This document shows positions 1,571 to 49,080 of a stretch of DNA of 64,000 nt, piece by piece. Made by a program: the position numbers and the translations under genes. Position 1 is the stretch's first letter, and each line of letters opens with the position of its first letter. Under the pieces are notes generated by a model that was not told the DNA's origin, did no database searches, and saw nothing but the letters and a program-made list of their open reading frames with translations. The stretch lies in the IMG/VR virus record IMGVR_UViG_3300022698_000267, positions 62,001-126,000 of that record. The stretch is one strand, 5' to 3'.

Positions 1571-2581
1571 ATGAACATTCGAGAAATTTTAAAAGGAACG
1601 ACACCAGGAAAAATTCAGCAAGTCGGGTACATGTCTATCATTCCTGTCCTTCGGGAACCAGAGGATGTGAATGAAAATGTATGTGATCCAACCAAGATTC
1701 TTATCGGTACCAGAAATTATGGTGAAATGGATATGGAAAATCCAACCGATAAAATTGGAATTGTTCCTTTCGGTACTGGAGTATTGACCAAACAGAGAGC
1801 ACAGAATCATGCCACCCCAAAAGCCAAGATTCTGAGATCCAAGGCTTTGGAGAGCATAGACTACGGTGCTTGCATTCAGGAAACTCAAGGTGGATTAATT
1901 TCTAGGGGAGAACATGAATTTACTATTCTTCCTTGGTCTTTGAGAGAAGCCGGAATTCTAACACGTAACAAGAAGGAGTATTCAAAACTTTGGGCGCCAA
2001 TTCGAGAATTCAATAATTCTTTGGGTGTCCGGATAACCGGACACTTGGAAGTTTATTTAGATCATTTTAAGGACGACCTGGATAGTTTTGTTGCGCAGTT
2101 TGAAGTGGTTCCAAATCAAGTCGGTGCCATTATCTTAATGAATGGCTATGTGATGGGGATCGAACTTACCCCAAATTACAGTTACTTCCGGTCCATTTGG
2201 AAACCTTTGATTCGAGAATCTTATGGTTCATTAGTGCTTCAGTACCAGAAACAATTTGGAGAGGATGCTCCTATTCCAAGAACCCGAGTTGCTTTGCAAA
2301 CCAATGTGAAAGACATGAAATCATTGCAAAAGGAATTAGTTCGGACTCAAGAAGCTGAAGATGAAAAGGTTAAAGACGTCATTCGGAAGTTCGTGAATGA
2401 TAAATTTACCTGTACATCGGAAGAGATTGCAGATGGTTACAAAGTTCAGACTGTAACTAATAAGCAATTTATTGGACAGGTGGTAACCAAGGATTCAGAT
2501 GTTCAATATGCTTCTTTGGTAACTTCTGCTAGGGGAATTCGTGAGCAACAGAAGTTCGAAAAGGATGACTTTGTAATCTAA
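1571..2581 (+). CDS. ARPP-like (DUF6569-type) protein, partner of the upstream vWA gene
   Basis: MSIIPV, AQNHA, ACIQETQG, QVGAIILMNG..GIE and W..LIRESYG pattern recalled for the ARPP family; SD AAGGAGG; directly downstream of the vWA gene. Confidence 0.55.
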   Translation: MNIREILKGTTPGKIQQVGYMSIIPVLREPEDVNENVCDPTKILIGTRNYGEMDMENPTDKIGIVPFGTGVLTKQRAQNHATPKAKILRSKALESIDYGACIQETQGGLISRGEHEFTILPWSLREAGILTRNKKEYSKLWAPIREFNNSLGVRITGHLEVYLDHFKDDLDSFVAQFEVVPNQVGAIILMNGYVMGIELTPNYSYFRSIWKPLIRESYGSLVLQYQKQFGEDAPIPRTRVALQTNVKDMKSLQKELVRTQEAEDEKVKDVIRKFVNDKFTCTSEEIADGYKVQTVTNKQFIGQVVTKDSDVQYASLVTSARGIREQQKFEKDDFVI

Positions 2582-3909: not shown

Positions 3910-4623
3910 ATGATCTACGTTTGTGGTGACGTTCACGAATTTAAAGACAAAGATAAACTGTCTTCCAAAAATTGGCCTGAAGGAAAACTTCTTTCCAAAG
4001 ATGATTATTTAATAGTTCTTGGAGACATGGGACTAATCTGGGATGCTATATCCTCCCCAAGAGAAAAAAGATTAATTGAATGGTATAATCAAAAATCATG
4101 GACCACTTTATTCATAGATGGTAACCATGAAAACTTTGATCGTCTATTCTCAGATGAGTTTGGCAATGTACCAAAATTTGGATCGACTGTCAAACAAATA
4201 TCCGATTCTATATACTATTTAAAAAGAGGAAATGTATACAAAATAGATAATCGAAAGGTCTTTACCTTTGGAGGTGGGGAATCCATTGATAAAAATAGAA
4301 GATTAACCAGGATTAGTTGGTGGTATCAAGAGATTCCAAATTATCGAGAAATGGATAAAGCTATTGATAAATTGAAAAATTTTGATAATTGTGTCGATTT
4401 TATCCTCACACATGCTTGCTCAAATCTTGCATTTGAGATGTTAATGCAAAGAGCCGACCTAGGATATAAAAGAGATGCTGAAAGGGCATTACGGTCCTTC
4501 TTAGACTGGATAGAAAGGAATGTGCAATTTAAACAATGGCATTTTGGCCATTATCATGATGATTTTAAATTAGATAATAAGCATTTTCTGCATTATGAAA
4601 ATAAACCAATGCGAATTGTTTAA
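3910..4623 (+). CDS. Calcineurin-like metallophosphoesterase
   Basis: GDVH, LGDMG, DGNHE, LTH, FGHYH motifs. Confidence 0.9.
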   Translation: MIYVCGDVHEFKDKDKLSSKNWPEGKLLSKDDYLIVLGDMGLIWDAISSPREKRLIEWYNQKSWTTLFIDGNHENFDRLFSDEFGNVPKFGSTVKQISDSIYYLKRGNVYKIDNRKVFTFGGGESIDKNRRLTRISWWYQEIPNYREMDKAIDKLKNFDNCVDFILTHACSNLAFEMLMQRADLGYKRDAERALRSFLDWIERNVQFKQWHFGHYHDDFKLDNKHFLHYENKPMRIV

Positions 4624-17013: not shown

Positions 17014-17073
17014 TGATCCAGACATTTAAATGTGGTGGATGAATTCACTATGAAAAATAATAAGGAGCATGTT

Positions 17074-17973
17074 ATGGAACTGACAGTTTATGGTTGCAGG
17101 GGCAGCATTCCAACACCGTCAACAAAGGAACATAGCACAATTATATATGGAGGAGACACGACTTGTTTTAAAGTCTCTTTCGAAGGTCTCAAAACTCACC
17201 TTATTCTCGATTGTGGTTCCGGAATGCGTCAATTGGGAAATGATTATATTCCTAGTCATGTTCTACAAGGCAATCCAGTACAAGCAGTCATTTGTTTGAC
17301 TCATTTTCATCACGATCATATTCAGGGAATTCCTTTCTTCGCCCCACTGTATATGAAGCAGAATCATTTCCTTTTTATTGGTCCTGTTTTCGATGGAATT
17401 ATTGGTGAGACAAGGAAACAAGTGCAGGATTATCTGCGACATGAACAACTGCCTCCATTTTTTCCTGTGTATCATGATTGCATGCCCTCCCAGAAAAAAT
17501 ATTTGGATGTTATTCCTGGTGAACAAGTTTTGATTTCACCAGATCTTATGGATTCATTTGATTTCTCATCTTTTCATGATAAAGTCGAGATTACAACCTT
17601 TGCTTTGAATCATCCGAATGGGGCTTGTGGTTATCGAGTAGAGTATCGTGGAAAGGTCATTTGTTTCTGTGGTGATCATGAACATTTAGGCTCTCCTTAT
17701 GTGCTATTTGAAAAATACTGTCAAGATTCTGATCTTTTGGTTATGGATGCTGCATATACTGAAGAGGAGTATATGAATTCAAACAATCCTAAGCAGGGAT
17801 GGGGACATGGAACAATTGGTAGTTGTATTGCTGAAGGGGAGAAATTAAATGCGAAGCAAGTTATGCTTTCACATCATGATCCTTTACATGATGATGTATT
17901 TCTTGCTAATGCTGAGGATAAACTTCCAGAAAATTTCTTCTTTGCAAAACAAGGAATGGTAATAGACATATGA
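17074..17973 (+). CDS. MBL-fold metallo-hydrolase (RNase Z / cyclic-nucleotide phosphodiesterase-like)
   Basis: GCRGSIP, LDCGSG, THFHHDHIQG, HP..ACGYR, GDHE, WGH, SHHDP; start at ATG 17074 with SD AAGGAG. Confidence 0.9.
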   Translation: MELTVYGCRGSIPTPSTKEHSTIIYGGDTTCFKVSFEGLKTHLILDCGSGMRQLGNDYIPSHVLQGNPVQAVICLTHFHHDHIQGIPFFAPLYMKQNHFLFIGPVFDGIIGETRKQVQDYLRHEQLPPFFPVYHDCMPSQKKYLDVIPGEQVLISPDLMDSFDFSSFHDKVEITTFALNHPNGACGYRVEYRGKVICFCGDHEHLGSPYVLFEKYCQDSDLLVMDAAYTEEEYMNSNNPKQGWGHGTIGSCIAEGEKLNAKQVMLSHHDPLHDDVFLANAEDKLPENFFFAKQGMVIDI

Positions 17974-27244: not shown

Positions 27245-28108
27245 TATTCAGCGATACTGAAAATGATAGTTCATCCTTGCGACACGTATCCAACTTGTGA
27301 TACGTGTCCAACATATACAAGTACTACTGAAGCAACAGATTCAGTACGAATATATGTTGGAAATTCATTCGTTAGTGAAACTAAACGTGATGAAGAAAAG
27401 GCATTCAAGGATTATAAAGAATTACAACATTTAATGCATGTTGCAGAAAGGCATGCAGAACAAAAAGCATGGTGGTATGCTGGTTTTGGAAAAGTTCATC
27501 TTTACGACGTTAAACCAAAAAGTCATTTAATTCATAGACGAATGATGTCCTGTAATAGATTTGATTAAGAAGCAGAATTTTAAAGTGAAAAGGGAATTAG
27601 AATGCCAATCGTAATTATTCATGAAGAAGTTTTTAGTTCCAAAGACGCTAACCCAGGTTTATATGGATCAGTTGACTTTCCTGGGGAAATGTTAATCAAA
27701 ACTCATTCAGGATTATGGTTTAATACTGCAGGTACGGAATTAAATCCCAAAGAAATTTTTCTTACTAATGTCTACACAGATCCTGATGAAGAAGAGATAA
27801 ATCCAAGTGGAGAGAAGTATAAAGAAACAAGTCTAACAGATTGTAAGCATGATTTTTTCATGGCTGTTTGTAAGAAATGTAAACAAGTTGTTCCACTTTA
27901 AAATGATAGAACCCATTATACATAAACAAGGTAGGGAAACTGCTACAAAATATGTAGGGTTTGGTCAGTACGAAGAGATAAAAGCTCCTCTATGTGTGGG
28001 TGCCAAAATGTTGTATAAGGGTTTCTCTTATTATATACATAGAAACTGGAAGTATGTGACATGTAAACATTGTTTGAAGAAAAAGAGGATTAGAAAGTGA
28101 TTAAAAAT

Positions 28109-28246
28109 AGCTGGCAGCGGCGCTGGAGCGAAAGCGCACCGTATCGAGCACGGGAGTAATTGGGTGGATGTCCAGGGCTCGACCGATGGGGTACTAAACG
28201 ATCCGTCAAATTGCTCATAGCCGGGGTAGCGTCCGGTCTGCCAGTT
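28109..28246 (+). ncRNA. tRNA-like structured ncRNA with very long variable arm
   Basis: GC-rich intergenic island; CTGGCAG/CTGCCAG acceptor-like stem, GCGC D-like stem, CCGT/ACGG stem with 7-nt loop, 15-bp variable-arm helix, GCCGGG-GTAGCG-TCCGGT T-like arm; no CCA. Confidence 0.75.
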
Positions 28247-29795
28247 AAAATAACTACTAGAAGTGAAATACAGGGATAATTGAATGAGACGTTGCTATTT
28301 TTGTAAAGAACCAATCTCATTACTAGCAACTTATTATATAGTAAAGGTTCCTACGAAACCAAAAGGTGTGTCAAATAGATGGAAACAAATTGGAGTTGCT
28401 TGTGAAAGATGTCAGGATAAGACACCTATAAAGGATAAAAGGAAAGATAATGACAAATATAGTCTGTACTCGGACTGAATGTTTTTACAATATACTGTGT
28501 GTAGGTTATTTTGGATGTAAAGCAACTGCTATTGGAATTACTGAGAAAGGATGCGATACTTATTTTAATTACTCTGAAACTCTAAAAGAAATTGAAGAGG
28601 AATTTCAAGTTGCTTCAGATTCTGAAAAGGTCGATTGATGAACATTGAAAAAGCTCGTAAGATTATAGGAAAAACTGAATATTTTCGTTCATACTTTCGG
28701 AAAGATATAGTTGATGCAATTAATTGGGTACTTGACACTTATCCGAATTGTGACAATTCCATATGCAGCAAACACCTATATCATGAATCAGGATGTAAAC
28801 TTTGCGAAGCAATTACTGTGGCTGAGTTAATCATAATTGATAAGAGAGGAGAGACAATGAAAGATACTAATATAAGGGAAAAATTAAAGAAGGAATCAGC
28901 CCGTCTAGAGAGTCTGAAGAAGTCTATAGACGCTGTTCTGGCAGAACCCATAGAGGAATCAGAACCATCGGATGTTAGTATAACTCTGGTTGGAAATCCC
29001 GAATGGTTACAAAAGCTTCAAGAACTTCATGAGCTTCATGAAGAGTTGGTTGCGGAGGCTATTGTCAAATGAAATTAGAAGATTACATCGAGAAGGCTAA
29101 AAAAGAATTAGATGATCTACAAAACCAATTTGTGGAAAGCAATAAGAAAGATCCTGATATGTGGCCTTTGGAAATGGAAGAGACTGATTGGGGCGATCAG
29201 GAATTGGCCGCAAGGTTTGGACAGATTTAAATTATGAGTAGTGCAATCGATATAAATGATTTTTTAAAATCTACAGAATCTAATGTCTGTATGGGTCATT
29301 TCATGGATATGCCAGATTGTCCTGGTAAAATTGATAGTAAACTCCCTATCTGTAAAGATTGTGTTGCTCAAGCAATGGAAGCAATGGAGCAGTCAATATG
29401 GCAACAATAAGTCCAGCAATTAAAGAAATTTCTGAGTTGATTATCAAAGAGGGAAATATCAGATCCAATACTGACCAATACCAAAATACTAATTCTGCTA
29501 TTCATTCTGTATTAATGGATCTGGTTCCAATATTATGTGGAACTATGGAAAAGAATGTTAAAAGAAAAAAGAAAACTGGAAGCAATGATGAAATTGCGAA
29601 CTGTTTGTGAAAGAGAAATATGGTCTGGTTTCTTTGGAATAGATGAATATGGTACTCAGCCTGAATGTGGACAAGAGATTGAAATAGAAGTAGAAGAGGA
29701 TTGTATAATCAATGACAAATATGGAATTCGACCCTCATTTTCAGTGGAATGTCCAAAATGTCATGGAACTATAGCATGGCCTCAACAGTGGGAAG

Positions 29796-30779
29796 TTGTG
29801 GAGAATGATAATGATAATAAATGAAAAACTAACAGTTAATGAAAAAATAATAGTGTATATGATCTTTGGTTCTCATCTATATGGAACTAACACACCTGAT
29901 TCTGACACAGATTACAAAGGGGTTTTCTTTCCAACTAAAGAACAGATATTTCTTGGAAGAATCCCAAAATCTTATTCCACCAGCCCAAAGAAAACAGGAC
30001 AGGGACAAAAAAATACCTCTGATGATACTGATATAGAAATCTATTCTCTCCACTACTTTTTAAAATTAGCATGTGAAGGACAAACTGTTGCTATAGACAT
30101 GCTTCACGCTCCAAGTCATATGCTTTTGGAATCTTCTGAGATTTGGGATTTCATTGTAGGAAATAAACATAGATTCTACAGCAGAGATATGGATTCTTTT
30201 ATTCGCTATGCTAGGAAACAGGCGGCTAAATATGGAATAAAAGGTAGTCGTTTAGCCGTAACCAAAGAATTTATAGATTTACTAAATTCTGTTCCAGATG
30301 ATACAAGACTTTCTGAGTTATGGAATAAACTTCCAGATGGTGAACATTGTTATTTTGTGGAAGATGACCCAAAAGGAATTGCTCAATATCAAATCTGTGG
30401 AAAAAAGTTTCAAGCTACTAGTAAAGCATTGTATGTTAAGAAAATAGTTCAAAGTTTCTATGATCGTTATGGTGAACGTGCTAAACAGGCTGAATTAAAT
30501 CAAGGGATTGATTGGAAAGCAGTTTCACATGCTTTAAGAGCCGCTTATCAAACCAGGCAAATTTTAACAGAAGGAACCATAACTTATCCTCTAAAAGAAT
30601 CTGGTTTTCTACGGGATGTGAAGCAGGGTTATTTTCACTACACTAAATACGTTGGTCCTGTTTTAGAAGCTCTTATGGATGAACTTGAAGAGCTTTCTAA
30701 AAATAGTGATCTTCCTGCAACAGCCGATAGAAAGTACTGGGATACCTTCCTCATAGATCTCATCGATGCAACTCTTTAA
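29796..30779 (+). CDS. Pol-beta superfamily nucleotidyltransferase (T4 NrdC.11 / RlaP-like)
   Basis: FGSHLYGTNTPDSDTDYKGV and DWKAVSHALR. Confidence 0.85.
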   Translation: MWRMIMIINEKLTVNEKIIVYMIFGSHLYGTNTPDSDTDYKGVFFPTKEQIFLGRIPKSYSTSPKKTGQGQKNTSDDTDIEIYSLHYFLKLACEGQTVAIDMLHAPSHMLLESSEIWDFIVGNKHRFYSRDMDSFIRYARKQAAKYGIKGSRLAVTKEFIDLLNSVPDDTRLSELWNKLPDGEHCYFVEDDPKGIAQYQICGKKFQATSKALYVKKIVQSFYDRYGERAKQAELNQGIDWKAVSHALRAAYQTRQILTEGTITYPLKESGFLRDVKQGYFHYTKYVGPVLEALMDELEELSKNSDLPATADRKYWDTFLIDLIDATL

Positions 30780-34580: not shown

Positions 34581-35030
34581 TTAACTCAAAGTTCTACGTT
34601 TTTTAGATCTTTCACCCATGAATTCCCGTTTGTGTTTCTTTAGAAGACGAATAACATTTCCTTTAGTAGTTTCACATTTCTCAGCTATTTGTTTTATTGT
34701 CATATCCCGCATTTTTTTAGGAGGTATCTGCAAAAAGTTCTCTTGCTTTACTCCAGGATGTATAGAAAATCTTCTTCCACCCCTTGGTTTCTGTACAAAG
34801 ATGTTTATCTCTTTTAGATACCGTGTAACTCCATGTGGTGAAAGTCCCAATTTTCTTGCTAGAGGTCTTACATAAAACTCGCATTCTTTATAGAGATCAG
34901 CAATCCATTCCTCTGCCGTTTTGTAATTGGTTTTATTCCAAGTGTTGTAAGTGTCTTTAAAACTTTCCCAATCTATACGAGTATACACATTAATCCTCCG
35001 TTTTAGTAGTAACTGGTTCCCAACAATCAC
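34581..35030 (-). CDS. Putative double HTH DNA-binding protein
   Basis: VRPLARKLGLSPHGVTRYL and TIKQIAEKCETTKGNVIRLL. Confidence 0.55.
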   Translation of the reverse strand: MIVGNQLLLKRRINVYTRIDWESFKDTYNTWNKTNYKTAEEWIADLYKECEFYVRPLARKLGLSPHGVTRYLKEINIFVQKPRGGRRFSIHPGVKQENFLQIPPKKMRDMTIKQIAEKCETTKGNVIRLLKKHKREFMGERSKKRRTLS

Positions 35031-35212
35031 ATTGCTTTACAGGAGCAAATTGGTCGTCTCGTTGAACAATATATCCCATTTTTCTTTTGATTGGAGCAGG
35101 TAGTGGATAACGACAAATACCATCTCTAGTAAATTTTTCGGGGTTTAATTCGGAAATAACTGTTTTCCATTCTGACCAGATTGGTTCCCATTTACAAGTC
35201 AGACACTTAAAC

Positions 35213-36022
35213 TCAATTTGATTCTTCGATGATTGGGTCTTCTCCATTGAAAATAACTCCTACTCTATTGGTTACTTTAGAAAATACAGGCATATCTAGT
35301 CTTCTAACTTCTGTTCTTTCAATTTCTAGATCAGGATTCTCTCTTGCTTCATGTTTTGGTGGAAGTTTTTCAATTTCTTTAGTATCAAACTTCCTAAGGA
35401 CTGTTCTTTTTTGGAAGTACATTCCTCGTTTAAAATTAGCAGGATAATCATTCCAGTTCACACCTTTTTCAAATAACATTTCCTGCATATCTTTTCCATT
35501 TTTCTTGTGTAATTGTTTGTGGGAATAGTATACTCTTGCTGCCATTGAAATACTATTTTTGGTAGCATCAAATTCTCTCCACAAAATAACATTGGCTGCT
35601 TCTTGTTTAGTCGGGACTTCCCATGCTCTACAATCGAATAGAGCAACTCTGTGTGCTTTTTCAGGAATCATCTTACTTAAATAAGCATTAAAGGTTGCAG
35701 TGGTCACAGAAGTTAAAACAGAAACCATTTTCAATATTTTTCTATCAAAAAATATTTGGCTTTTCAAATTGTCACTGTAATATACCAGACTAATTTCATC
35801 TGATTGTGTATGACCAATACAGGCATTAGTTTCTTTAACAAGAGTATCAACAACAATACCCATTAATTCTGATAGTCTTACATCATAAGGACGTTCTAAT
35901 CCTTTTGTAAATTGACTGAAATTTTTACCATCAATTCGTACACAGATTGGAACCATAGGAAGAAACTTTCGTTTACTTTCACGTCCTTCATACATTTTCA
36001 TTCTGTCGCCTAAATCATCCAT
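35213..36022 (-). CDS. thg1: Thg1-like 3'-5' nucleotidyltransferase (tRNA-His guanylyltransferase family), intact active site
   Basis: DRMKMYE, RIDGKNF, QSDEISL, FDCR, WR..DA.KNSI, GVNWNDYP..FKRG. Confidence 0.93.
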   Translation of the reverse strand: MDDLGDRMKMYEGRESKRKFLPMVPICVRIDGKNFSQFTKGLERPYDVRLSELMGIVVDTLVKETNACIGHTQSDEISLVYYSDNLKSQIFFDRKILKMVSVLTSVTTATFNAYLSKMIPEKAHRVALFDCRAWEVPTKQEAANVILWREFDATKNSISMAARVYYSHKQLHKKNGKDMQEMLFEKGVNWNDYPANFKRGMYFQKRTVLRKFDTKEIEKLPPKHEARENPDLEIERTEVRRLDMPVFSKVTNRVGVIFNGEDPIIEESN

Positions 36023-36036
36023 TTATCATTTCCCTC

Positions 36037-36855
36037 TTATTTTGTATCAACAATTGGGTCTTCTCCATTGAAAATAACTCCTACTCTATTGATTACTTCG
36101 GAAAATGGAGGCATGTCTAATCTTCTGACTTCCGTTCTTTCAAATTTCAGATCAGGATCTTTTCTTGCTATGTGTTTTGGTGGAAGATCTGTAATTTCCT
36201 CTTTATTGAACTTTTTGGAAACTTTTCTTCTTTGGAAAAAAGTTCCTCGTTGAAAACTAACAGGATAATCGTTTTTCCAATCCATATCTTTTTCAAGTAA
36301 CATTGCTAATCTATCTTCTTCATTCTTTCCCAACAATTGTTTATGTGAGTAATATTGTCTTGCTGCTATTGAAATACTTTTTTCAATTGCGACAGTTTCT
36401 TCCCATAGAATAATATTGGCTGCCTCTTCCAATGTTGGGACTCCCCAAGCTTTGCAAGAAAACACAGCAACACGGTGTGCTTTTTCTGGTATTACTTCTG
36501 GAAGGTATCTATTAAATGTTGCAGTAGTTACAGAAGAGATGACAGAAATCATTTTCATTATTTTTCTATCGAAAAATATTTGACCCTTCAAATCGTCATT
36601 GTAATAAATCAGATTGATTTCATTTGATTGTATATACCCAATGCAAGCATTAGTTTCTTTGACAATGGCTTCAGTAACAATCCACATCAAATCTCGCATT
36701 CGTGTATCGAAGGGTTTATCTAATCCTTTTGTAACTCGCTTCCAATCTATACCAGTAACTTGTATACAAATTGGAATCAAGGGCATAAATCTTCGATTAC
36801 TTTCACTACCTTTGTAAAGTCTCGTTCTTTCAAATAAATCGTCTAATTTGTTCAT
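36037..36855 (-). CDS. Thg1-like paralog lacking catalytic residues
   Basis: Collinear with 35213..36022 but QVTG for RIDG, QSNE for QSDE, FSCK for FDCR. Confidence 0.88.
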   Translation of the reverse strand: MNKLDDLFERTRLYKGSESNRRFMPLIPICIQVTGIDWKRVTKGLDKPFDTRMRDLMWIVTEAIVKETNACIGYIQSNEINLIYYNDDLKGQIFFDRKIMKMISVISSVTTATFNRYLPEVIPEKAHRVAVFSCKAWGVPTLEEAANIILWEETVAIEKSISIAARQYYSHKQLLGKNEEDRLAMLLEKDMDWKNDYPVSFQRGTFFQRRKVSKKFNKEEITDLPPKHIARKDPDLKFERTEVRRLDMPPFSEVINRVGVIFNGEDPIVDTK

Positions 36856-37110
36856 TTTAATCTCCTATAAAATGTCTTTATTCCAGCCGGGTTTTGTGTT
36901 ATCAAGTCTTTTATACCAATCTTGATTGGCTAAGGTTATTGATGTACTCTTATTTTCATTCTGATCTTTCATGAAAGTCAAAGCTCGTAGAACGTAAAGA
37001 TCTTTTTCTAGATATTCTTGTGCTACGTCAAGATGACAATGCTTTTTTACTACTTCCCTCATTGTCATAGAAACTAATAGTCCGTCAATGATTTGTGAAG
37101 CATCCATTTA

Positions 37111-37596
37111 TCATTTCCTTTCTTTCCAATCAGTTATTTTAAAGGCTCTATCTTCGGTTATGTGAACAGAAAATAATTTATCAAAACCTTCATTCATACT
37201 TGGTATTTCTAATCTTTGATAGCTGGCTATTACAGCTACTTTTGGAAGATTTTTATCAAGTCGTTTTTCATTTCTTTTTATACAGATATCTAAATTTGCC
37301 TGAAAATAAAAACCAATAATCGGCATTTTTACTTTCTTCAATAAGGGAAAGTATTTTTCTCTTTCTTTTTTAGAGGGATTGGTATTATCGATAACCATTG
37401 GTTGTTCTGTTTCAATACAAAATTGAATTAATTTTGATTCTCGATTTCTGGTTTTCAACATATCCAGATTGACTCTTATATGCGTATCTGCAAAGTTCTT
37501 CTGATAGAAGGTTGATTTTCCGGTGGCTGGGATTCCAATAAAAATTATGTTATTCCTTTTCCAAGAAGCTGTTGACTTGTTTGAACTGCTTTCCAT
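37111..37596 (-). CDS. P-loop polynucleotide-kinase-like protein (AAA_33 type)
   Basis: GIPATGKST Walker A, VNLDML, VIDNTN...R, RN..R, EGFD. Confidence 0.88.
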   Translation of the reverse strand: MESSSNKSTASWKRNNIIFIGIPATGKSTFYQKNFADTHIRVNLDMLKTRNRESKLIQFCIETEQPMVIDNTNPSKKEREKYFPLLKKVKMPIIGFYFQANLDICIKRNEKRLDKNLPKVAVIASYQRLEIPSMNEGFDKLFSVHITEDRAFKITDWKERK

Positions 37597-37865
37597 TTTA
37601 TATCAAACCCTCCATCTTTAACAAAAATTGACAAGCTTTTAATCTAGTTTTAAATCCATCAGTCCCATTAAGAGGATGAGGTTTTCTCCACACAGCAGAC
37701 CATCCAGAATATTTACCTAAATTAAAAACCTGTCCAATTAACTTGCCCCCAATGTAGAAAGCATAATGACTATTTTGTAACTTCTTAAAACCATAGTCCT
37801 CAACTTTTCCATTTACATTTAAAGAATACTTCGACATTTTTTCTCCAATAAAATCTTAAACTAAT

Positions 37866-38725: not shown

Positions 38726-39322
38726 ATGAAACTTAAAGCACCAAGAGCCCTAATAGAATTAACCGGCCACATTTACTTCCACAAACTTCCCGGTTTTATA
38801 CTATACAGGCCTCATATGCATAAAGTAAGAGGTGAGGACGTACGAAAAGTTTTAGATGTAGTAGAAACCGGTGACATACTACTAAGACGATTCGATGGAT
38901 ACCTCAACACAATTCTAACTCCTGGATTCTGGGGACATGCTGGAACCTACATAGGAGAAAACGATGTTGTCCATTCATTAAGCCAAGGAGTAACTCAAGA
39001 AGACATTCTAAACTTCTGTAGAGCCGATGCAATATCAATCCTTAGACCACTCAATGGTCCAATCCCAAACGTAAGAGAAATTGCTATAGCCCTTGCAGAT
39101 GAACACGTCCCATACGATTACGACTTCTGCTCAGGCAATAAAGCCTACTATTGCACAGAACTGGTCGACTACTTATCAGGATGGATATTCAAAAACGATT
39201 ACCAAATGATAGGAGGAAATTTGATACTAACTCCGGATGGGATTTTCAATAGCACACAAGCATATAAAAAACTAACGATTAACTACAGGAATCCTTCTAG
39301 AAGTCTTATTTCAACTTATTAA
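38726..39322 (+). CDS. Permuted papain-like (YiiX/YebB-type NlpC/P60) amidase
   Basis: GDILLR, WGHAG (His before Cys), PYDYDF, YYCTELV, TPDG. Confidence 0.85.
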   Translation: MKLKAPRALIELTGHIYFHKLPGFILYRPHMHKVRGEDVRKVLDVVETGDILLRRFDGYLNTILTPGFWGHAGTYIGENDVVHSLSQGVTQEDILNFCRADAISILRPLNGPIPNVREIAIALADEHVPYDYDFCSGNKAYYCTELVDYLSGWIFKNDYQMIGGNLILTPDGIFNSTQAYKKLTINYRNPSRSLISTY

Positions 39323-39906
39323 AACTGTCTTTTCAACCTCCAAGAATTTTGTATATTCGAGTATAATAGAAATTCGTCCTCAATTAAATCTTGCAAAGAA
39401 GATTTCAAAGTAGCATCAAAATCTTCAACACTAATATCCCACCCCATCTTTGCCAGAGCATAAGAAACTCCATTAAAAGTTAAGGAACCTCTCTCCTGCT
39501 CAAAAATCTTCTTCAAATCTTTTTTCAAAGCCTTGTAAGGAGGTTCCTTAAATTCTACCAACTTCCAAACCATTTGAATATTAGAATACGATAAATAACC
39601 TTCATCAACCAAGGCAAGTAGATTACGCCGAATCTCACGTTCGAAATCCTTTCTGTCATGAATCGTCCAACCACTCCTAAGCAAGATCGTCACCAAATCA
39701 GTAGTATACAAAGGTCTCAACTCAGACTTAAAAATTTCAAGCAAAACATCTTTTAAATTCGGATCTTCAACAGGATCTTCAACAGGATCTTCAGCTAATC
39801 CTAACAAATCAGACATTTCATCAAGACTTTTTCGAATGGAATTCAAAGAACGACGAAAAATTTTACTAACTTCCTTGTCCATAATCCTCTCCTCATACGA
39901 TTGCAT
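39319..39906 (-). CDS. Two-repeat winged-helix-like protein (paralog family)
   Basis: Repeated IF..E...L.....L...GW.I....F...I...L..L..EG.L.YS unit. Confidence 0.55.
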   Translation of the reverse strand: MQSYEERIMDKEVSKIFRRSLNSIRKSLDEMSDLLGLAEDPVEDPVEDPNLKDVLLEIFKSELRPLYTTDLVTILLRSGWTIHDRKDFEREIRRNLLALVDEGYLSYSNIQMVWKLVEFKEPPYKALKKDLKKIFEQERGSLTFNGVSYALAKMGWDISVEDFDATLKSSLQDLIEDEFLLYSNIQNSWRLKRQF

Positions 39907-40531
39907 AAGTCAAAACATTTCCCTTACTAGAGTAAGTCAAAAATCCTTCTCCAACCAAAATGGATAAAGTATTACTAACTTTACGTTTAAAATTGGCATT
40001 GTCAACCAACCACCCCTCTTCAGCCAAAATCTTTATCAAATCTTCGAAATGTATAATTCCCGGTCCCTCCTTAAAAATTCTAATCAAATTCTTTTTCAAC
40101 GCTCTATAAGGAGCAACATCTTCGGCCCCACGAAACTTCCAAACATCCTTGGAATTAGTAGTGATTTTATTTGAGCAATCGAAATACTCCAAAATCCCGT
40201 CCTCAACCAAGCTGGACAAAGCAGTACGAATATTCTTCTTAAATCCAGCATTACTAATCGGCCACCCCTGCTCAAACAAAATCACCAGCAAATCATTAAA
40301 CGATAAAGTACCCTGTTCCCTTTTAAAAATCGTAATCAAATTCCTCCTTACCGTACTAACAGGAACAAGAATAGACGTCATCTTCTTGCCCTCCTCCCTC
40401 TCTTCCTCCTCCATCTTCTTATGCTCCTCAACTACCATACTCCACTCAAGCCAACCAACTACTTCATCAAGACTTTTTTGCATCGAAACCAAAGAAGAAC
40501 GAATCTTTTCAACATCTTTTCCACTAATCAT
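39893..40531 (-). CDS. Two-repeat winged-helix-like protein (paralog family)
   Basis: Same repeated unit; N-terminal SL.S..KSLDE helix shared. Confidence 0.55.
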   Translation of the reverse strand: MISGKDVEKIRSSLVSMQKSLDEVVGWLEWSMVVEEHKKMEEEEREEGKKMTSILVPVSTVRRNLITIFKREQGTLSFNDLLVILFEQGWPISNAGFKKNIRTALSSLVEDGILEYFDCSNKITTNSKDVWKFRGAEDVAPYRALKKNLIRIFKEGPGIIHFEDLIKILAEEGWLVDNANFKRKVSNTLSILVGEGFLTYSSKGNVLTYAIV

Positions 40532-44722: not shown

Positions 44723-45754
44723 ATGACTTCGGATTTAACTATAATAGCAAATGACAGTTTGGTTCTAGAAAAGAAGATGTTGGGTTTTTTAAAGCATACC
44801 AGATTATTCTTCGAGAACATCATCACTTATCTAAAAGGAAAACGGTTAACTAAAAGCAATTTTCGTATTGAAGACACTTCAGTTGTTCCTAACTACATAA
44901 CTGACATTGAAGAAATTTTGGATAGAGGTGAAGAACTTGTTGTTCTGGAGCATATTGTTAACGAACTTCATCCAAAAAGATGTTTCCTTTTTGATATGAT
45001 GCAGGAGCTAATGAAGAGTGAAGTTCTTTCTGATGAAGAGAGAAACAAGGCTAAATCCATTTGTGATGATTATTTACAGAAAGTTGTTTGGAGACTTTGT
45101 AACTCAGAATTATCTTTGGTAAAGAAAAAAGCTGGAAGTATTGCTCGTGGAGTAACTAGTGTTTCTTTCCAGGATAAAGTGGGTTATGGTTATGAAGGAT
45201 TGTTAAAGGCAGCTCATAAATTTGATTTCGAAAAGGGGATCAAATTTAATACCTATGCTTCTTGGTGGATTTGGGAAAGTATTTTGAATGGATGTAACAA
45301 TGAAATGTACTTTTTGAAGGTTGAAAGTCCAAAACAACAGAAGTACATAAAATTTCTATCATCCAGTCGAAAAAGAGATGGAAAAGAATCCACTCATTTG
45401 TCTTCATCTGAACTATTAGAGATTTATGCAGCATGTAACATTGCTTCTGTATATGGCGAAGATGGTGAAGACCATTCTGATTTGAAGATCGATGATAGTA
45501 ATTCAGAAGTTTTCTACCATAGTAATCCCGAAAACATTTTAAATATTTCTCAGAATCCCAGATCAATGTTAGAAGATACAATAAATACTAAATTGAATAA
45601 GGATGAGAGAAAGATTTTAACTCATTACTATGGTATTTTGGATTGTAGAAAACGATCAGAGAGTCAATTATGTCGTTCCTTTGGTTTTACGATAACACAA
45701 TTGAGAGATAAAATTCAGGAAATTCTCTCTAAGATAAGGGAAGACATGATATAA
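44723..45754 (+). CDS. Phage-encoded sigma70-family RNA polymerase sigma factor
   Basis: Region 2 GLLKAAHKFDFEKGIKFNTYASWWI; degenerate region 4 (L...ERKIL..YYG...IL.KIR). Confidence 0.88.
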   Translation: MTSDLTIIANDSLVLEKKMLGFLKHTRLFFENIITYLKGKRLTKSNFRIEDTSVVPNYITDIEEILDRGEELVVLEHIVNELHPKRCFLFDMMQELMKSEVLSDEERNKAKSICDDYLQKVVWRLCNSELSLVKKKAGSIARGVTSVSFQDKVGYGYEGLLKAAHKFDFEKGIKFNTYASWWIWESILNGCNNEMYFLKVESPKQQKYIKFLSSSRKRDGKESTHLSSSELLEIYAACNIASVYGEDGEDHSDLKIDDSNSEVFYHSNPENILNISQNPRSMLEDTINTKLNKDERKILTHYYGILDCRKRSESQLCRSFGFTITQLRDKIQEILSKIREDMI

Positions 45755-47825: not shown

Positions 47826-48179
47826 ATGAAATGTCTACAGTGTGGTCGATGTTGTTTCTATGCTGTAATCATTATTAAGCCAGAATCTATATCAGAAGAT
47901 CTTGATATGGACTGTTTAACTGATGATGACTTAATGGCTTTGGATGGTACAGAGAAATGTCCTCATTTAACTTGGGAAGGACGTAAAGCTTTTTGTAACA
48001 TTCATCATTACGATTGGTTTCCAGATACACCTTGTGGACAGTTTACACAGATCGAAGCATCACCTCATAGTTTTTGTCGTATTGGGAAGAATATGTTAGA
48101 TCCAAAGAATGAAGATTTATGGCGAAGGATTACTTTTAGAACCTGGGAAGATGAAATAGAGGAGACAAATGAAAAATAA
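47826..48179 (+). CDS. YkgJ-like CxxCxxCC cysteine-cluster protein
   Basis: CLQCGRCC, CPHL, CNIH, PC. Confidence 0.7.
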   Translation: MKCLQCGRCCFYAVIIIKPESISEDLDMDCLTDDDLMALDGTEKCPHLTWEGRKAFCNIHHYDWFPDTPCGQFTQIEASPHSFCRIGKNMLDPKNEDLWRRITFRTWEDEIEETNEK

Positions 48180-49080
48180 ATATCAGTCTTTAACTAAAGA
48201 AGAAAGATTTAAGGGATCTTTGGTTGGTTTGGCAACAGGAGACGCATTGGGTGCTTCTCTAGAGTTTATACATACGATACCAAATCCTCCTTTAACTGAA
48301 ATGACAGATGGTTATTGGACTGATGATACATCTATGGCTCTTTGCACTGTTCATAGTCTTATCGACAGAAGGACTTTTGATTTAAGAAATCAAATGGAAA
48401 ATTTTGTCAGTTGGTACACCAGAGGCTTTCTTAGCAGCAGAGGTTACTGTTTTGATATTGGCAACAGAACAAGAGAAGCTTTAGAAGATTACATGTTGCT
48501 TGATCAAATAACTGAAGGAGTAGATCCCCATGATGACAATTTGAGCAATGGTTCATTGATGCGATTGGCTCCAGTACCTTTATTTTATTACAATAATGTA
48601 GAATTAGCAGCAAAGAGAAGTAAACAGCATACATTACTAACTCATCCTAGTCAAATGTGTGTTGATGCGTCTGCATGTCTTTCAACTTTCATAACTTGTT
48701 GTTTTCATGATCATCTAGGGAAACATGCTTTGGTAGAAGATGTTGCTAACTATCGTAACGACCTTTTTCCAAGTTTAAGTAACTGGTTTGATGATTACTT
48801 ACTTAATCCAAGGAAACCAGATACCAGCAAACATGTTGGTTACGTAATGACATCTTTAGAGATGGCCTTGTGGGCTTTTTTAACTACACCTAACTTTGAG
48901 GAAGGATGTATATTATGTGTTAACAATGGTGGTGATACTGATACCTATGCAGCTATATATGGACAGTTAGCTGGTGCCTACTATGGTTACAAAAGTATAC
49001 CAGAGAGGTGGACAAAGAAACTTATTCAACACAAGATTATTTGTGATTATGCTAAGATTCTTTGTGATATAACTGCTTAA
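48169..49080 (+). CDS. ADP-ribosylglycohydrolase (DraG/ARH family)
   Basis: GDALGA, WTDDT, FDIG, NGSLMRLAP, TH, GGDTDT.AAI.GQLAGA.YG. Confidence 0.95.
   Translation: MKNKYQSLTKEERFKGSLVGLATGDALGASLEFIHTIPNPPLTEMTDGYWTDDTSMALCTVHSLIDRRTFDLRNQMENFVSWYTRGFLSSRGYCFDIGNRTREALEDYMLLDQITEGVDPHDDNLSNGSLMRLAPVPLFYYNNVELAAKRSKQHTLLTHPSQMCVDASACLSTFITCCFHDHLGKHALVEDVANYRNDLFPSLSNWFDDYLLNPRKPDTSKHVGYVMTSLEMALWAFLTTPNFEEGCILCVNNGGDTDTYAAIYGQLAGAYYGYKSIPERWTKKLIQHKIICDYAKILCDITA

What the first reader, a model, noticed from the sequence alone, without database searches (positions are those of the whole stretch)
35213..37596. Kinase + catalytically dead Thg1 + active Thg1 operon: an enzyme/pseudoenzyme 3'-5' polymerase pair
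Seen: two full-length tandem Thg1 paralogs. The downstream copy keeps RIDG, QSDE, FDxR and WR..D...N. The upstream copy has lost all of them (QVTG, QSNE, FSCK, WEETVAIEK) yet is an intact 272-aa ORF with a strong SD, well-conserved scaffold and a 39-nt identical 3' segment (35232-35270 = 36053-36091). Known: Thg1 needs two metal-binding aspartates, works as an oligomer, and a PNK supplies the 5'-phosphate it activates. Inference: loss concentrated on catalytic residues implies selection as an RNA-binding/specificity subunit of a hetero-oligomer, a regulator, or a decoy for host inhibitors. I know no described phage system of this kind.
Basis: partly seen in the sequence, partly recalled or inferred. 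Interest (0 to 1): 0.85.

Follow-up and report, generated by a model that had tools for sequence, protein, structure and literature searches.

The report
Jumbo-phage reverse polymerase with dead twin
A large uncultured phage carries, next to an RNA 5'-kinase gene, two side-by-side copies of a tRNA 5'-end repair enzyme (a Thg1-like 3'-5' polymerase); one copy has lost nearly all its catalytic residues but still looks selected for, and this was seen in no other genome searched, so it rests on this one contig.

Summary
Window 36037-36855(-) and 35213-36022(-) are tandem Thg1-like protein (TLP) genes, 62% identical. A PNK-type P-loop kinase lies upstream at 37111-37596(-).

The downstream copy keeps every family-invariant residue. 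The upstream copy alone has replaced both metal-binding Asp (D34T, D78N), the NTP-binding residues R32, D133, R135, R152, D155 and E15, and the RNA 5'-end contacts K158 and N159. No other TLP among about 400 lacks these residues, and none is in tandem.

The dead copy is not decaying:
- The ORF is intact with an AGGAG ribosome-binding site.
- The AlphaFold2 model has pLDDT 97.
- Its branch has omega 0.27 (omega=1 rejected, p=0.016; variable columns alone p=0.006).
- Conserved columns changed twice as often as the rest.
- Under neutral drift the ORF would stay open in 2% of simulations or fewer.

It keeps the lysine that completes the partner's NTP site in trans, and the hairpin arginine. This fits the non-catalytic "B" protomer of the naturally asymmetric TLP dimer.

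The closest relative has a single active TLP, so this is a lineage-specific singleton. Neither expression nor complex formation could be tested. The kinase-TLP link is real (adjacent or fused in bacteria) but was published in 2010. Verdict: a new variant of a known kind, of moderate interest.

The parts
37111..37596 (-). PNK-type P-loop kinase (161 aa). It has Walker A GIPATGKST and the Asp of VNLD, which aligns to VNRD of PNKP. Predicted RNA 5'-OH kinase that makes the 5'-phosphate the TLP needs.
   Evidence: Pfam AAA_33 at 46.5 bits. PDB phmmer finds the PNKP kinase domain at E 5.5e-10, then PSTK and Cth Pnkp. NCBIfam matches to PSTK, PNK-3'Pase and Pnkp are all far below their equivalog cut-offs. 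The protein is 44% identical to a kinase that ends 3 nt before a TLP gene in L195. Homologues lie next to a TLP in 12 of 80 bacterial loci and are fused to a TLP in P0151 and P0077.
36865..37107 (-). 80-aa ORF of unknown function between the kinase and the dead TLP.
   Evidence: No hit in Pfam, PHROGs or NCBIfam. No useful lead from the ESM Atlas. No homologue in any other fetched locus.
36037..36855 (-). Catalytically dead TLP paralogue (272 aa, P0001). Changes relative to the family: E15K, R32Q, D34T, F38W, D78N, D133S, R135K, R152E, D155V, K158E, N159K. Kept: S77, E79, D50, K47, K101, R21/R22, R240 and the C-terminal NRVGVIFNGEDP.
   Evidence: PF04446 at 73.9 bits. It is the unique deviant at invariant columns. 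AF2 model pLDDT 97.2 and Foldseek match to 4KGM with TM 0.89. Omega 0.27 on its branch. AGGAG ribosome-binding site.
35213..36022 (-). Catalytically intact TLP (269 aa, P0002), predicted 3'-5' RNA polymerase for 5'-end repair.
   Evidence: PF04446 at 101.9 bits. Of the 36 columns at least 97% conserved across the other 136 members, the active copy matches all of them; measured against the 135 members excluding both window copies, it has one non-catalytic change, Y71H. It is 70% identical to P0003. The best PDB relative is BtTLP 4KGK.
36053..36091 (-). 39-nt segment identical to 35232-35270. It encodes NRVGVIFNGEDPI and contains AGGAG-N9-ATG.
   Evidence: In the active copy this ATG (35247) starts the 85-aa ORF. 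In the dead copy the same ATG (36068) opens a 17-codon ORF whose TGA (36017-36015) lies just after the active TLP's ATG (36022). This was read directly from the sequence and its function is untested.
34990..35247 (-). 85-aa Cys-rich ORF that overlaps the 3' end of the active TLP by 35 nt. Function unknown.
   Evidence: No family hit.

Best explanation
The locus is an RNA (probably tRNA) 5'-end repair module of a jumbo phage.

Proposed pathway: the PNK-type kinase phosphorylates the 5'-OH ends left by a nuclease. The intact TLP then activates the 5'-phosphate and fills in the missing 5' nucleotides, reading the 3' strand of the acceptor stem as template.

Proposed role of the upstream paralogue: it is a pseudoenzyme that cannot bind the two Mg2+ ions, the NTPs or the RNA 5' end. 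Its fold, basic charge, dimer-facing lysine and tRNA-elbow hairpin are maintained. It most likely pairs with the active TLP as the non-catalytic 'B' protomer of the dimer, within a dimer-of-dimers. Solved TLP-tRNA complexes are already asymmetric: one protomer supplies the active site, while the other holds the tRNA elbow and completes the NTP site in trans. A fixed heterodimer would make this asymmetry permanent and could change substrate choice or regulation.

Shown: the sequence features, their uniqueness, the selection signal, the predicted fold, and the kinase-TLP linkage in bacteria.
Inferred: loss of activity, the RNA-repair role, and the heteromer.
For: Family and fold:
- Both are TLPs.

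Residues lost. BtTLP mutagenesis and structure (PMC3701042) identify these as acting in cis, and all are replaced in the dead copy (mapped):
- D30 and D75: metal binding.
- R28 and R131: incoming NTP.
- E12 and R147: positioning those arginines.
- Also replaced are K158E and N159K, the counterparts of MaTLP R136/N137. Those two residues bind the tRNA 5' nucleotide and alpha-phosphate in molecule A (PMC4820378).

Residues kept:
- K101, the counterpart of BtTLP K99', which contacts the partner's NTP from the adjacent monomer.
- R21/R22, near the position of R16'.
- The invariant R240 in the second strand of the predicted beta-hairpin. MaTLP uses its hairpin Arg in molecule B to bind the tRNA elbow.

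Known asymmetry:
- The TLP:tRNA stoichiometry is 4:2, with one tRNA per dimer (PMC4820378).

Selection:
- Dead-branch omega is 0.27 against a background of 0.06. Omega=1 is rejected at p=0.016 and omega=background at p=2e-4.
- In the 231 variable columns omega is 0.22, and omega=1 is rejected at p=0.006. In the 36 conserved columns neutrality cannot be rejected.
- There are 51 amino-acid changes on the dead branch against 23 on the active branch. Conserved columns changed in 12 of 36 cases against 39 of 231 elsewhere (p=0.037).
- The simulated chance of keeping the ORF open under neutral drift is 0.02 at 0.1 substitutions per site and 0.001 at 0.2. Pairwise dS is 0.5-1.45.

Other:
- pI and net charge are kept: 8.79/+4 against 8.92/+5.
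- Both genes have good ribosome-binding sites and are 14 nt apart.
- Kinase homologues lie next to TLPs in 12 of 80 bacterial loci and are fused in P0151 and P0077. The published prediction of this link is in PMC2904730.
Against: - Singleton. No orthologue of the dead copy turned up in 5.8 billion clustered proteins, in 1.84 billion representatives, or in the 79 viral, 76 metagenome and 80 genome loci fetched from IMG/VR, JGI metagenomes and GTDB genomes. Long-term retention across lineages is therefore not shown.
- The closest relative manages with one active TLP.
- Omega below 1 is an average over the whole branch, and part of that time may predate inactivation. Synonymous sites are near saturation for the outgroups. 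The codon model is my own four-taxon implementation, without a parametric bootstrap.
- Uneven dS along the gene (0.62 / 1.45 / 0.50) hints at gene conversion, which could mimic scaffold conservation at the two ends.
- No physical contact, expression or activity was tested: no sequencing run was listed and no multimer prediction was possible.
- The 'trans residues kept' argument rests on two or three residues, which could equally be structural.
- The active copy keeps all B-role residues too, so it does not need a partner.
Confidence: 0.4

Rival explanations
1. Non-functional relic. A tandem duplicate lost activity and is drifting towards deletion, and the intact ORF and residual similarity reflect limited time and/or gene conversion from the active copy.
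For: - It is absent from all relatives and is a singleton.
- Its branch is 2.4 times longer than that of the active copy, and omega is raised 4-fold over background.
- The lower dS at both ends of the gene and the 39-nt identical run are compatible with conversion tracts.
Against: - Omega=1 is rejected (p=0.016 for the whole gene, p=0.006 for variable columns).
- Changes are not uniform: invariant columns changed twice as often as the rest.
- Nearly all cis-catalytic residues have turned over, several through 2-3 nucleotide changes. That implies a long time since inactivation, during which a neutral ORF in this AT-rich, Lys/Glu/Arg-rich gene would have acquired stops (P<=0.02).
- There are no frameshifts and only in-frame length differences.
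- A strong ribosome-binding site is kept.
- Phage genomes generally purge useless DNA (general knowledge).
Confidence: 0.17
2. A stand-alone RNA-binding protein or decoy that does not act through a heteromer with the active TLP. For example, it could sequester 5'-damaged tRNAs or tRNA halves, compete with the active TLP as a brake, or soak up a host factor that targets TLPs.
For: The fold, basic charge and hairpin are kept while the chemistry is lost. The active copy appears self-sufficient, since all its residues are intact and its relatives work alone.
Against: - The residues that hold the RNA 5' end and the NTPs are gone (K158E, N159K, R32Q, R135K), so binding of damaged ends by the dead copy alone would be weak.
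- TLPs are obligate oligomers whose active site lies at the dimer interface (PMC4820378). Two co-translated paralogues that are 62% identical are therefore likely to mix.
- No host inhibitor of TLPs is known (my own knowledge).
Confidence: 0.2
3. Neofunctionalised protein. The remodelled pocket (Q32, T34, W38, N78, S133, K135, E152, V155, K159) binds a new ligand or carries out metal-independent chemistry unrelated to 3'-5' addition.
For: Conserved columns changed faster than the rest of the protein (12 of 36 against 39 of 231). The changes cluster in four short motifs. This pattern is also expected under directional selection on the pocket.
Against: - Omega in the conserved columns is 0.25, not above 1, so there is no positive-selection signal.
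- No known family shares the new motif set.
- Foldseek finds only Thg1/TLP structures at significant scores.
- With a singleton there is no recurrent new motif to point to.
Confidence: 0.08

Closest known systems
Bacterial/archaeal Thg1-like proteins (TLPs), e.g. Bacillus thuringiensis TLP (PDB 4KGK/4KGM) and Methanosarcina acetivorans TLP (5AXK-5AXN)
   Same: - Both window proteins belong to this family by sequence and fold.
- The active copy keeps all catalytic and NTP-binding residues.
- The family forms a dimer of dimers and binds one tRNA per dimer asymmetrically (PMC3701042, PMC4820378).
   Different: All characterised TLPs are homo-oligomers of active subunits. Here a second, catalytically stripped paralogue is encoded directly upstream. 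I found no described inactive TLP or Thg1 paralogue in the paper library.
[quoted passage not shown]
   Same: It is a tandem duplication of the Thg1 module in which one copy is degenerate (the N-terminal module lacks the DxR motif), with a proposed division of labour between the copies.
   Different: - The plant modules are fused, are of the eukaryotic Thg1 type, and are both predicted to keep the metal-binding acids.
- The phage copies are separate genes of the bacterial TLP type.
- One phage copy has lost both metal ligands and most NTP and RNA-end contacts.
PNK-family kinase + Thg1/TLP gene neighbourhoods in bacteria (PMC2904730)
   Same: A P-loop polynucleotide-kinase-family gene lies next to a TLP. 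The window kinase is 28-44% identical to kinases that abut TLPs in Myxococcota, Planctomycetota and Lentisphaerota genomes, and it is homologous to the kinase domain fused to a TLP in P0151 and P0077.
   Different: - In the window the kinase is separated from the active TLP by an 80-aa ORF and the dead TLP.
- None of the other 78 distinct phage contigs has this kinase within 5 kb of its TLP, and none of the 75 other metagenome contigs has it directly adjacent: the one hit, L130, lies 589 nt downstream on the opposite strand.
Enzyme/pseudoenzyme paralogue pairs in tRNA modification (Trm61-Trm6, ADAT2-ADAT3, METTL3-METTL14) - analogy from general knowledge
   Same: A homo-oligomeric nucleic-acid enzyme is duplicated. 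One paralogue loses its catalytic residues and is retained as an RNA-binding or scaffolding subunit.
   Different: Those pairs are conserved across large clades and have been shown biochemically to be heteromers. This pair is known from one contig and nothing has been shown biochemically. No membership is claimed, only a working analogy.
Jumbo-phage Thg1/TLP genes (phage 201phi2-1, fHe-Yen9-04, Serratia BF and others; Iyer et al. 2021, PMC7824862)
   Same: A TLP encoded by a large phage, interpreted as part of an RNA-repair counter-defence. 156 deposited phage records carry a homologue.
   Different: Those phages show one copy each: 157 places in 156 records, and one TLP per locus in the other 78 distinct IMG/VR loci.

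Membership tests
Thg1/TLP superfamily (Pfam PF04446) | Significant match to the Thg1 catalytic-domain profile | tested here: met
   The active copy scores 101.9 bits and the dead copy 73.9 bits, against a gathering cut-off of 29.2. Both also match PHROG 4717.
Thg1/TLP superfamily (Pfam PF04446) | Palm-like fold matching solved Thg1/TLP structures | tested here: met
   The AF2 model of the dead copy has pLDDT 97.2. Foldseek finds 4KGM_A at E 1.5e-19 with a target-normalised TM of 0.89, and all 32 significant hits are Thg1/TLP structures. The active copy was not modelled.
Thg1/TLP superfamily (Pfam PF04446) | Two metal-binding carboxylates (hTHG1 D29/D76; BtTLP D30/D75) | tested here: not met
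   The dead copy has T34 and N78 at these positions, so the feature is not met for it. The active copy has D31 and D75, so the feature is met for it. The dead copy is therefore a structural member of the family but not a catalytic one.
Thg1/TLP superfamily (Pfam PF04446) | NTP-binding and positioning residues (BtTLP R28, R131, R147, E12, plus K99' in trans) | tested here: not met
   The dead copy has Q32, K135, E152 and K15 at the cis positions, while K101 (= K99') is kept. The active copy keeps all of them (residue roles from PMC3701042).
Thg1/TLP superfamily (Pfam PF04446) | 3'-5' nucleotide addition activity on 5'-truncated RNA | not testable with these tools
   This needs an in vitro assay.
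Bacterial-type TLP (as opposed to eukaryotic tRNA-His-specific Thg1) | Closer in sequence and structure to BtTLP than to eukaryotic Thg1 | tested here: met
   A profile search of the PDB gives BtTLP at E 6e-58, against yeast, human and Candida Thg1 at E 1e-22 to 1e-18. Foldseek ranks 4KGM/4KGK first.
Polynucleotide 5'-kinase family (P-loop; T4 Pnk / PNKP / Pnkp kinase domain) | Walker A motif, the catalytic Asp, and homology to PNK kinase domains | tested here: met
   GIPATGKST and VNLD align to GFPGAGKST and VNRD of PNKP at E 5.5e-10. AAA_33 scores 46.5 bits against a cut-off of 27. PHROG 505 'polynucleotide kinase' matches at E 4.5e-10.
Polynucleotide 5'-kinase family (P-loop; T4 Pnk / PNKP / Pnkp kinase domain) | Reaches the curated equivalog score of a named kinase (PSTK, PNK-3'Pase, bacterial Pnkp) | tested here: not met
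   The scores are 47.8, 40.1 and 29.4 bits, against cut-offs of 290.5, 502.8 and 750. It is a stand-alone kinase domain, not any of those named proteins.
Polynucleotide 5'-kinase family (P-loop; T4 Pnk / PNKP / Pnkp kinase domain) | Conserved genomic or architectural linkage to TLP (the published PNK-Thg1 neighbourhood) | tested here: met
   Homologues lie directly adjacent to a TLP in 12 of 80 bacterial loci, with gaps of -4 to +30 nt. AAA_33+Thg1 fusions occur in P0151 and P0077. A full Pnkp lies 127 nt upstream of a TLP in L214.
Polynucleotide 5'-kinase family (P-loop; T4 Pnk / PNKP / Pnkp kinase domain) | RNA 5'-OH kinase activity | not testable with these tools
   This needs an enzyme assay.
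Enzyme/pseudoenzyme hetero-oligomer | A paralogous pair in which one member lacks the catalytic residues | tested here: met
Enzyme/pseudoenzyme hetero-oligomer | The pseudoenzyme is under purifying selection | tested here: met
   Omega is 0.27, and omega=1 is rejected at p=0.016, or p=0.006 for the variable columns. The ORF-survival simulation agrees. Caveats: one lineage only, saturated dS, and a home-made model.
Enzyme/pseudoenzyme hetero-oligomer | The pseudoenzyme is conserved in related genomes | tested here: not met
   No orthologue was found in any collection searched, and the closest relative has one active TLP.
Enzyme/pseudoenzyme hetero-oligomer | A physical complex between the two paralogues | not testable with these tools
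   No multimer prediction is offered, and a read-through of the two genes is not accepted by the tools.
Pseudogene (decaying duplicate) | Frameshifts or stop codons, or dN/dS near 1 spread evenly over the gene | tested here: not met
   The ORF is intact at 272 codons and indels are in-frame only. Omega is below 1. Changes are enriched at invariant columns rather than spread evenly.

The most novel reading that the evidence does not exclude
The dead TLP is a dedicated, obligate non-catalytic subunit. It would form a fixed asymmetric heterodimer (2+2 heterotetramer) with the active TLP, supplying the tRNA-elbow hairpin and the trans lysine while leaving a single active site per dimer. That would retune which damaged RNAs the phage repairs after host nuclease attack. 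It would be the first natural pseudoenzyme partner of a 3'-5' polymerase, and a natural dissection of the two protomer roles seen in TLP-tRNA crystal structures.
Probability: 0.3. Interest if true: 0.7.

Novelty: new variant of a known kind. Interest (0 to 1): 0.5.

Why it matters
- Thg1/TLP enzymes are the only known polymerases that work 3'-5'. Their dimers use only one of two active sites per bound tRNA. A natural pair in which one protomer has given up catalysis while staying under selection would give direct genetic support to that structural asymmetry.
- It would also provide a ready-made system for separating the 'catalytic' and 'tRNA-holding' roles.
- It adds a case to the recurring pattern in which RNA-modifying homo-oligomers evolve into enzyme/pseudoenzyme heteromers, here inside a phage.
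- For phage biology, it suggests that the RNA-repair counter-defence of jumbo phages can be elaborated by subunit specialisation.
- The limits are severe. There is one contig and no expression or biochemical data. The kinase-TLP module and phage TLPs were already known.

Tried and rejected
- Orthologues of the dead copy. I ran a word-indexed search of 5.8 billion clustered proteins, a full HMMER scan of 1.84 billion representatives, IMG/VR scans with the single protein and with a family alignment, two metagenome scans, one GTDB genome scan and a tblastn of 50,697 deposited phages. None found anything closer than the co-resident active copy, and none found another dead or tandem TLP.
- Population variation and expression. 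Two sequencing-run searches listed no run, so read laying was never used.
- Synteny with the closest relative. Its 161-aa and 83-aa ORFs upstream of the TLP have the same lengths as the window's kinase and roughly the 80-aa ORF, but they are not homologous. The similarity is a coincidence of length, not synteny.
- Conserved neighbours of phage TLPs. Clustering ORFs within 3.5 kb of the TLP in all fetched loci then held (mostly the 79 viral loci, plus L002 and L005) gave no dominant partner: UDG in 10 loci, RNA ligase in 8, NAD-salvage genes in about 8 and a phosphoesterase in 4. The largest 'clusters' were shadow ORFs that overlap the TLP gene itself and were discarded.
- tRNA and Rfam scans of the window, looking for a substrate RNA, found nothing. 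The GC-rich structure at about 28105-28255 folds only modestly better than shuffles (z = -2.0) and was not pursued.
- Promoter and terminator scans were no better than shuffled sequence.
- Biopython's YN00 method failed with a maths error. ML pairwise dS values against the outgroups are saturated, so I used NG86 together with my own branch model.
- The 80-aa ORF had no family hit and no useful ESM Atlas lead.
- Heterodimer prediction was not possible, because the tools offer no multimer mode and accept no read-through of the two genes.


Full report
**What is there.** The window is part of IMG/VR contig IMGVR_UViG_3300022698_000267, 273.5 kb long (JGI contig Ga0248662_100005). Its GC content is 32-42% per 2-kb bin, about 37% on average. 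Its genes are those of a jumbo phage: lysozyme, a sigma-70-like factor, RlaP, phosphoesterases and an ADP-ribosylglycohydrolase.

Between roughly 33.5 and 44 kb most ORFs, including all those described here, run on the minus strand. In transcription order the relevant genes are:
- a 79-aa ORF (37598-37837);
- a 161-aa kinase (37111-37596);
- an 80-aa ORF (36865-37107);
- a 272-aa Thg1-family gene (36037-36855);
- a 269-aa Thg1-family gene (35213-36022);
- an 85-aa ORF that overlaps the end of the second Thg1-family gene (34990-35247).

The gaps between these genes are 1, 3, 9 and 14 nt, followed by a 35-nt overlap. No convincing promoter or terminator lies between them.

**Checking the observation.**
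- Both long ORFs hit Pfam Thg1 well above threshold and are 62% identical.
The downstream copy has RIDG, QSDE, FDCR and WREFDATKN. The upstream copy has QVTG, QSNE, FSCK and WEETVAIEK.
- The 39-nt identity 35232-35270 = 36053-36091 is exact. It is moderately unlikely by chance: P=0.002 when codon columns are permuted, and P=0.017 when the amino-acid pattern is held fixed.
- That segment contains AGGAG-N9-ATG. In the active copy this is the ribosome-binding site and start of the overlapping 85-aa ORF. In the dead copy the same ATG opens a 17-codon ORF that ends just after the active TLP's start codon. I read this from the sequence and did not test it.
- Both TLP genes have good Shine-Dalgarno sequences.

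**Which family.** The closest solved protein is the Bacillus thuringiensis Thg1-like protein (4KGK/4KGM), far ahead of eukaryotic Thg1. These are therefore bacterial-type TLPs, the template-dependent 5'-end repair enzymes, not tRNA-His guanylyltransferases. An AlphaFold2 model of the upstream copy is very confident (pLDDT 97.2). It matches 4KGM with a target-normalised TM of 0.89, and every significant hit is a Thg1/TLP structure.

**How dead is the upstream copy, and how unusual.** I aligned 137 distinct family members: 66 database proteins plus the TLPs of 79 IMG/VR loci.
- All 136 others carry R32, D34, F38, D78, D133, R135 and R152, and 135 of 136 carry D155 and N159. The upstream copy differs at every one of these positions.
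- Of the 36 columns that are at least 97% conserved, it has changed 12. The downstream copy has changed none of those 36 (it has one non-catalytic change, Y71H, when conservation is measured without both window copies).
- Widening the set to 214 proteins, including 148 representatives of 50%-identity clusters from 15 billion proteins, gave no other full-length deviant.
- The same held for 162 TLP hits in the 161 loci then held (viral, metagenome and contig look-ups) and 78 in 80 bacterial genome loci.

Published work on BtTLP and MaTLP lets the residues be mapped by role (PMC3701042, PMC4820378; alignments):

| Role in solved TLPs | Reference residue | Dead copy | Status |
|---|---|---|---|
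| Metal ligand | BtTLP D30 | T34 | lost |
| Metal ligand | BtTLP D75 | N78 | lost |
| Incoming NTP | BtTLP R28 | Q32 | lost |
| Incoming NTP | BtTLP R131 | K135 | changed |
| Positions the arginines | BtTLP E12 | K15 | lost |
| Positions the arginines | BtTLP R147 | E152 | lost |
| tRNA 5' nucleotide / alpha-phosphate | MaTLP R136 | E158 | lost |
| tRNA 5' nucleotide / alpha-phosphate | MaTLP N137 | K159 | lost |
| Reaches the partner's NTP site in trans | BtTLP K99' | K101 | kept |
| Near the trans residue R16' | BtTLP R16' | R21/R22 | kept |
| Third carboxylate | BtTLP E76 | E79 | kept |
| Base-contacting residue | BtTLP D46 | D50 | kept |
| Hairpin Arg; MaTLP uses its hairpin Arg, in the other protomer, to hold the tRNA elbow | MaTLP R215 | R240 (predicted hairpin, second strand) | kept; equivalence to R215 inferred, not aligned |

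So the residues that act within the catalytic protomer are gone, while those that act on behalf of the partner are retained. Loss of activity is a strong inference from the published mutagenesis. It was not tested here.

**Is it decaying?**

*Phylogeny.* The two window copies and two metagenomic proteins (P0003, P0004) form a well-supported clade (99/98). The order within the clade is unresolved. The dead copy's terminal branch is 0.67 against 0.28 for the active copy.

*Synonymous divergence.* Pairwise dS between the two copies is 0.76 (NG86) to 1.2 (ML), so the duplicate is not young. By thirds of the gene it is 0.62, 1.45 and 0.50. The middle third is as diverged as the outgroups, so the ends may have been partly homogenised by gene conversion.

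*Codon model.* I wrote a four-taxon branch codon model (GY94-type, F3x4 codon frequencies).
- The background omega is 0.06 and the dead-branch omega is 0.27.
- Equal omega is rejected (p=2e-4), and so is omega=1 (p=0.016).
- In the 231 variable columns omega is 0.22, and omega=1 is rejected at p=0.006.
- In the 36 conserved columns omega rises from 0.018 to 0.25, and neutrality cannot be rejected.

*Parsimony.* There are 51 amino-acid changes on the dead branch against 23 on the active branch. The invariant columns changed at twice the rate of the rest: 12 of 36 against 39 of 231 (p=0.037). Several catalytic replacements need two or three nucleotide changes (D34T, D133S, R152E). The catalytic sites have therefore turned over almost completely while about 80% of the scaffold stayed put.

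*ORF survival.* I simulated neutral substitution on this AT-rich, Lys/Glu/Arg-rich gene. The ORF stays open in 2% of runs at 0.1 substitutions per site and in 0.1% at 0.2. Both values are below the divergence implied by dS.

*Charge.* pI and net charge are unchanged.

Together these argue that the protein has been kept for something other than catalysis. The caveats are:
- there is only one lineage;
- outgroup dS is saturated;
- the omega estimate averages over the time before and after inactivation;
- gene conversion is possible;
- the model is home-made and has no bootstrap.

**Relatives.** The nearest relative of either copy outside this contig is P0003 (70% identical to the active copy, 62% to the dead copy). 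It occurs on several 8-25 kb marine or lake contigs, where a single active TLP is followed directly by an RlaP nucleotidyltransferase. In the window, RlaP lies 5 kb away at 29796-30779. None of the other 78 distinct IMG/VR loci or the 75 other metagenome loci (those not from P0003's contig) has two TLPs. The identical protein is recorded on a second, 10-20 kb contig, which argues against an assembly artefact.

**The kinase.**
- It is a stand-alone PNK-family P-loop kinase. The Walker A motif and the catalytic Asp align to PNKP.
- It falls far below the equivalog scores for PSTK, PNKP and Pnkp.
- No other phage or metagenome TLP locus has it directly alongside. The only hit there is L130, 589 nt downstream of the TLP on the opposite strand.
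- In bacterial genomes, however, homologues (28-44% identical) sit directly against the TLP gene in 12 of 80 loci, mainly in Myxococcota, Planctomycetota and a Lentisphaera MAG.
- Two protein clusters are kinase-TLP fusions (P0151 and P0077).
- One locus, L214, has the full Pnkp repair enzyme 127 nt upstream of a TLP.
The same association and inference were published in 2010 (PMC2904730), so it is confirmation rather than discovery.

**Most likely mechanism.** The kinase converts the 5'-OH ends left by a nuclease to 5'-phosphate. The active TLP adenylylates or guanylylates that end and refills the missing 5' nucleotides against the 3' strand.

In MaTLP-tRNA crystals each dimer binds one tRNA: protomer A provides the active site, protomer B provides the hairpin on the elbow, and the active site is completed at the dimer interface (PMC4820378). 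The dead copy has exactly the residue profile of a permanent protomer B. I therefore think the most likely role (about 0.4) is as a non-catalytic subunit of a mixed TLP oligomer. Being encoded immediately upstream of the active copy would favour co-assembly.

The alternatives are:
- a stand-alone RNA binder, brake or decoy (about 0.2);
- a relic on its way out (about 0.17);
- a remodelled pocket with a new ligand (about 0.08).

**Comparison with what is known.**
- Phage TLPs are known (PMC2904730, PMC7824862; 156 phage records).
- The PNK-TLP neighbourhood is known (PMC2904730).
- A tandem Thg1 duplication with one partly degenerate module is known in seed plants, as a fusion in which both modules keep their metal ligands (PMC2904730).
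- Enzyme/pseudoenzyme heteromers are a familiar theme in tRNA modification (general knowledge).
- I found no description of a catalytically dead Thg1/TLP paralogue in the paper library. Absence from that library is not proof of absence.

The finding is best rated as a new variant of a known kind. It is interesting to specialists in 3'-5' polymerases and pseudoenzymes, but it rests on a single metagenomic contig and on inference.

Noticed in passing
Its MFE is -60.2 kcal/mol with z = -2.0 against shuffles. There is no Rfam hit even at E<=1 and no tRNA or tmRNA. It is a possible non-coding RNA of unknown kind.
   Followed up: partly
window 29796-30779 (+); L002 10840-11859: The window has an RlaP-family RNA-repair nucleotidyltransferase 5 kb from the TLP pair. 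In the closest relative contig, RlaP sits 14 nt downstream of the single TLP. A metallophosphoesterase (3910-4623) and an MBL-fold protein (17032-17973) also lie in the window.
   Followed up: partly
window 36015-36068 (-): Inside the 39-nt identical segment of the dead copy, AGGAG-N9-ATG opens a 17-codon ORF. Its TGA (36017-36015) lies immediately after the start codon of the active TLP (36022). It may be a translational-coupling device or simply a leftover of the duplication.
   Followed up: no
P0151, P0077; L214 652-2874; L228, L229, L231: Bacterial proteins that fuse an AAA_33 PNK-type kinase domain to a TLP (P0151 at 426 aa and P0077 at 465 aa). A full Pnkp (kinase-phosphatase-ligase) lies 127 nt upstream of a TLP in a Desulfatiglandales MAG. 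In three Kofleriaceae loci the kinase lies directly downstream of the TLP or in one ORF with it.
   Followed up: partly
window 35213-36855 (-): Synonymous divergence between the two TLP copies is uneven: dS is 0.62 for codons 1-90, 1.45 for codons 91-180 and 0.50 for codons 181-267 (Fisher p=0.048). This suggests partial gene conversion at both ends of an old duplicate.
   Followed up: partly
L002 3166-5008: The closest relative contig carries a resolvase gene plus an OrfB_IS605/TnpB-like gene (Cas12f-like TNB domain) about 5 kb upstream of its TLP, and an integrase further downstream.
   Followed up: no
window 1571-2581, 44723-45754, 48169-49080 (+): An ARPP-family protein, a sigma-70 region-2 protein and an ADP-ribosylglycohydrolase are encoded in the window. 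These are accessory and conflict-type genes typical of jumbo phages.
   Followed up: no
window 39319-40531 (-): Two adjacent ORFs (195 and 212 aa) have internally repeated, similar sequence modules. Only a weak wHTH hit was found.
   Followed up: no
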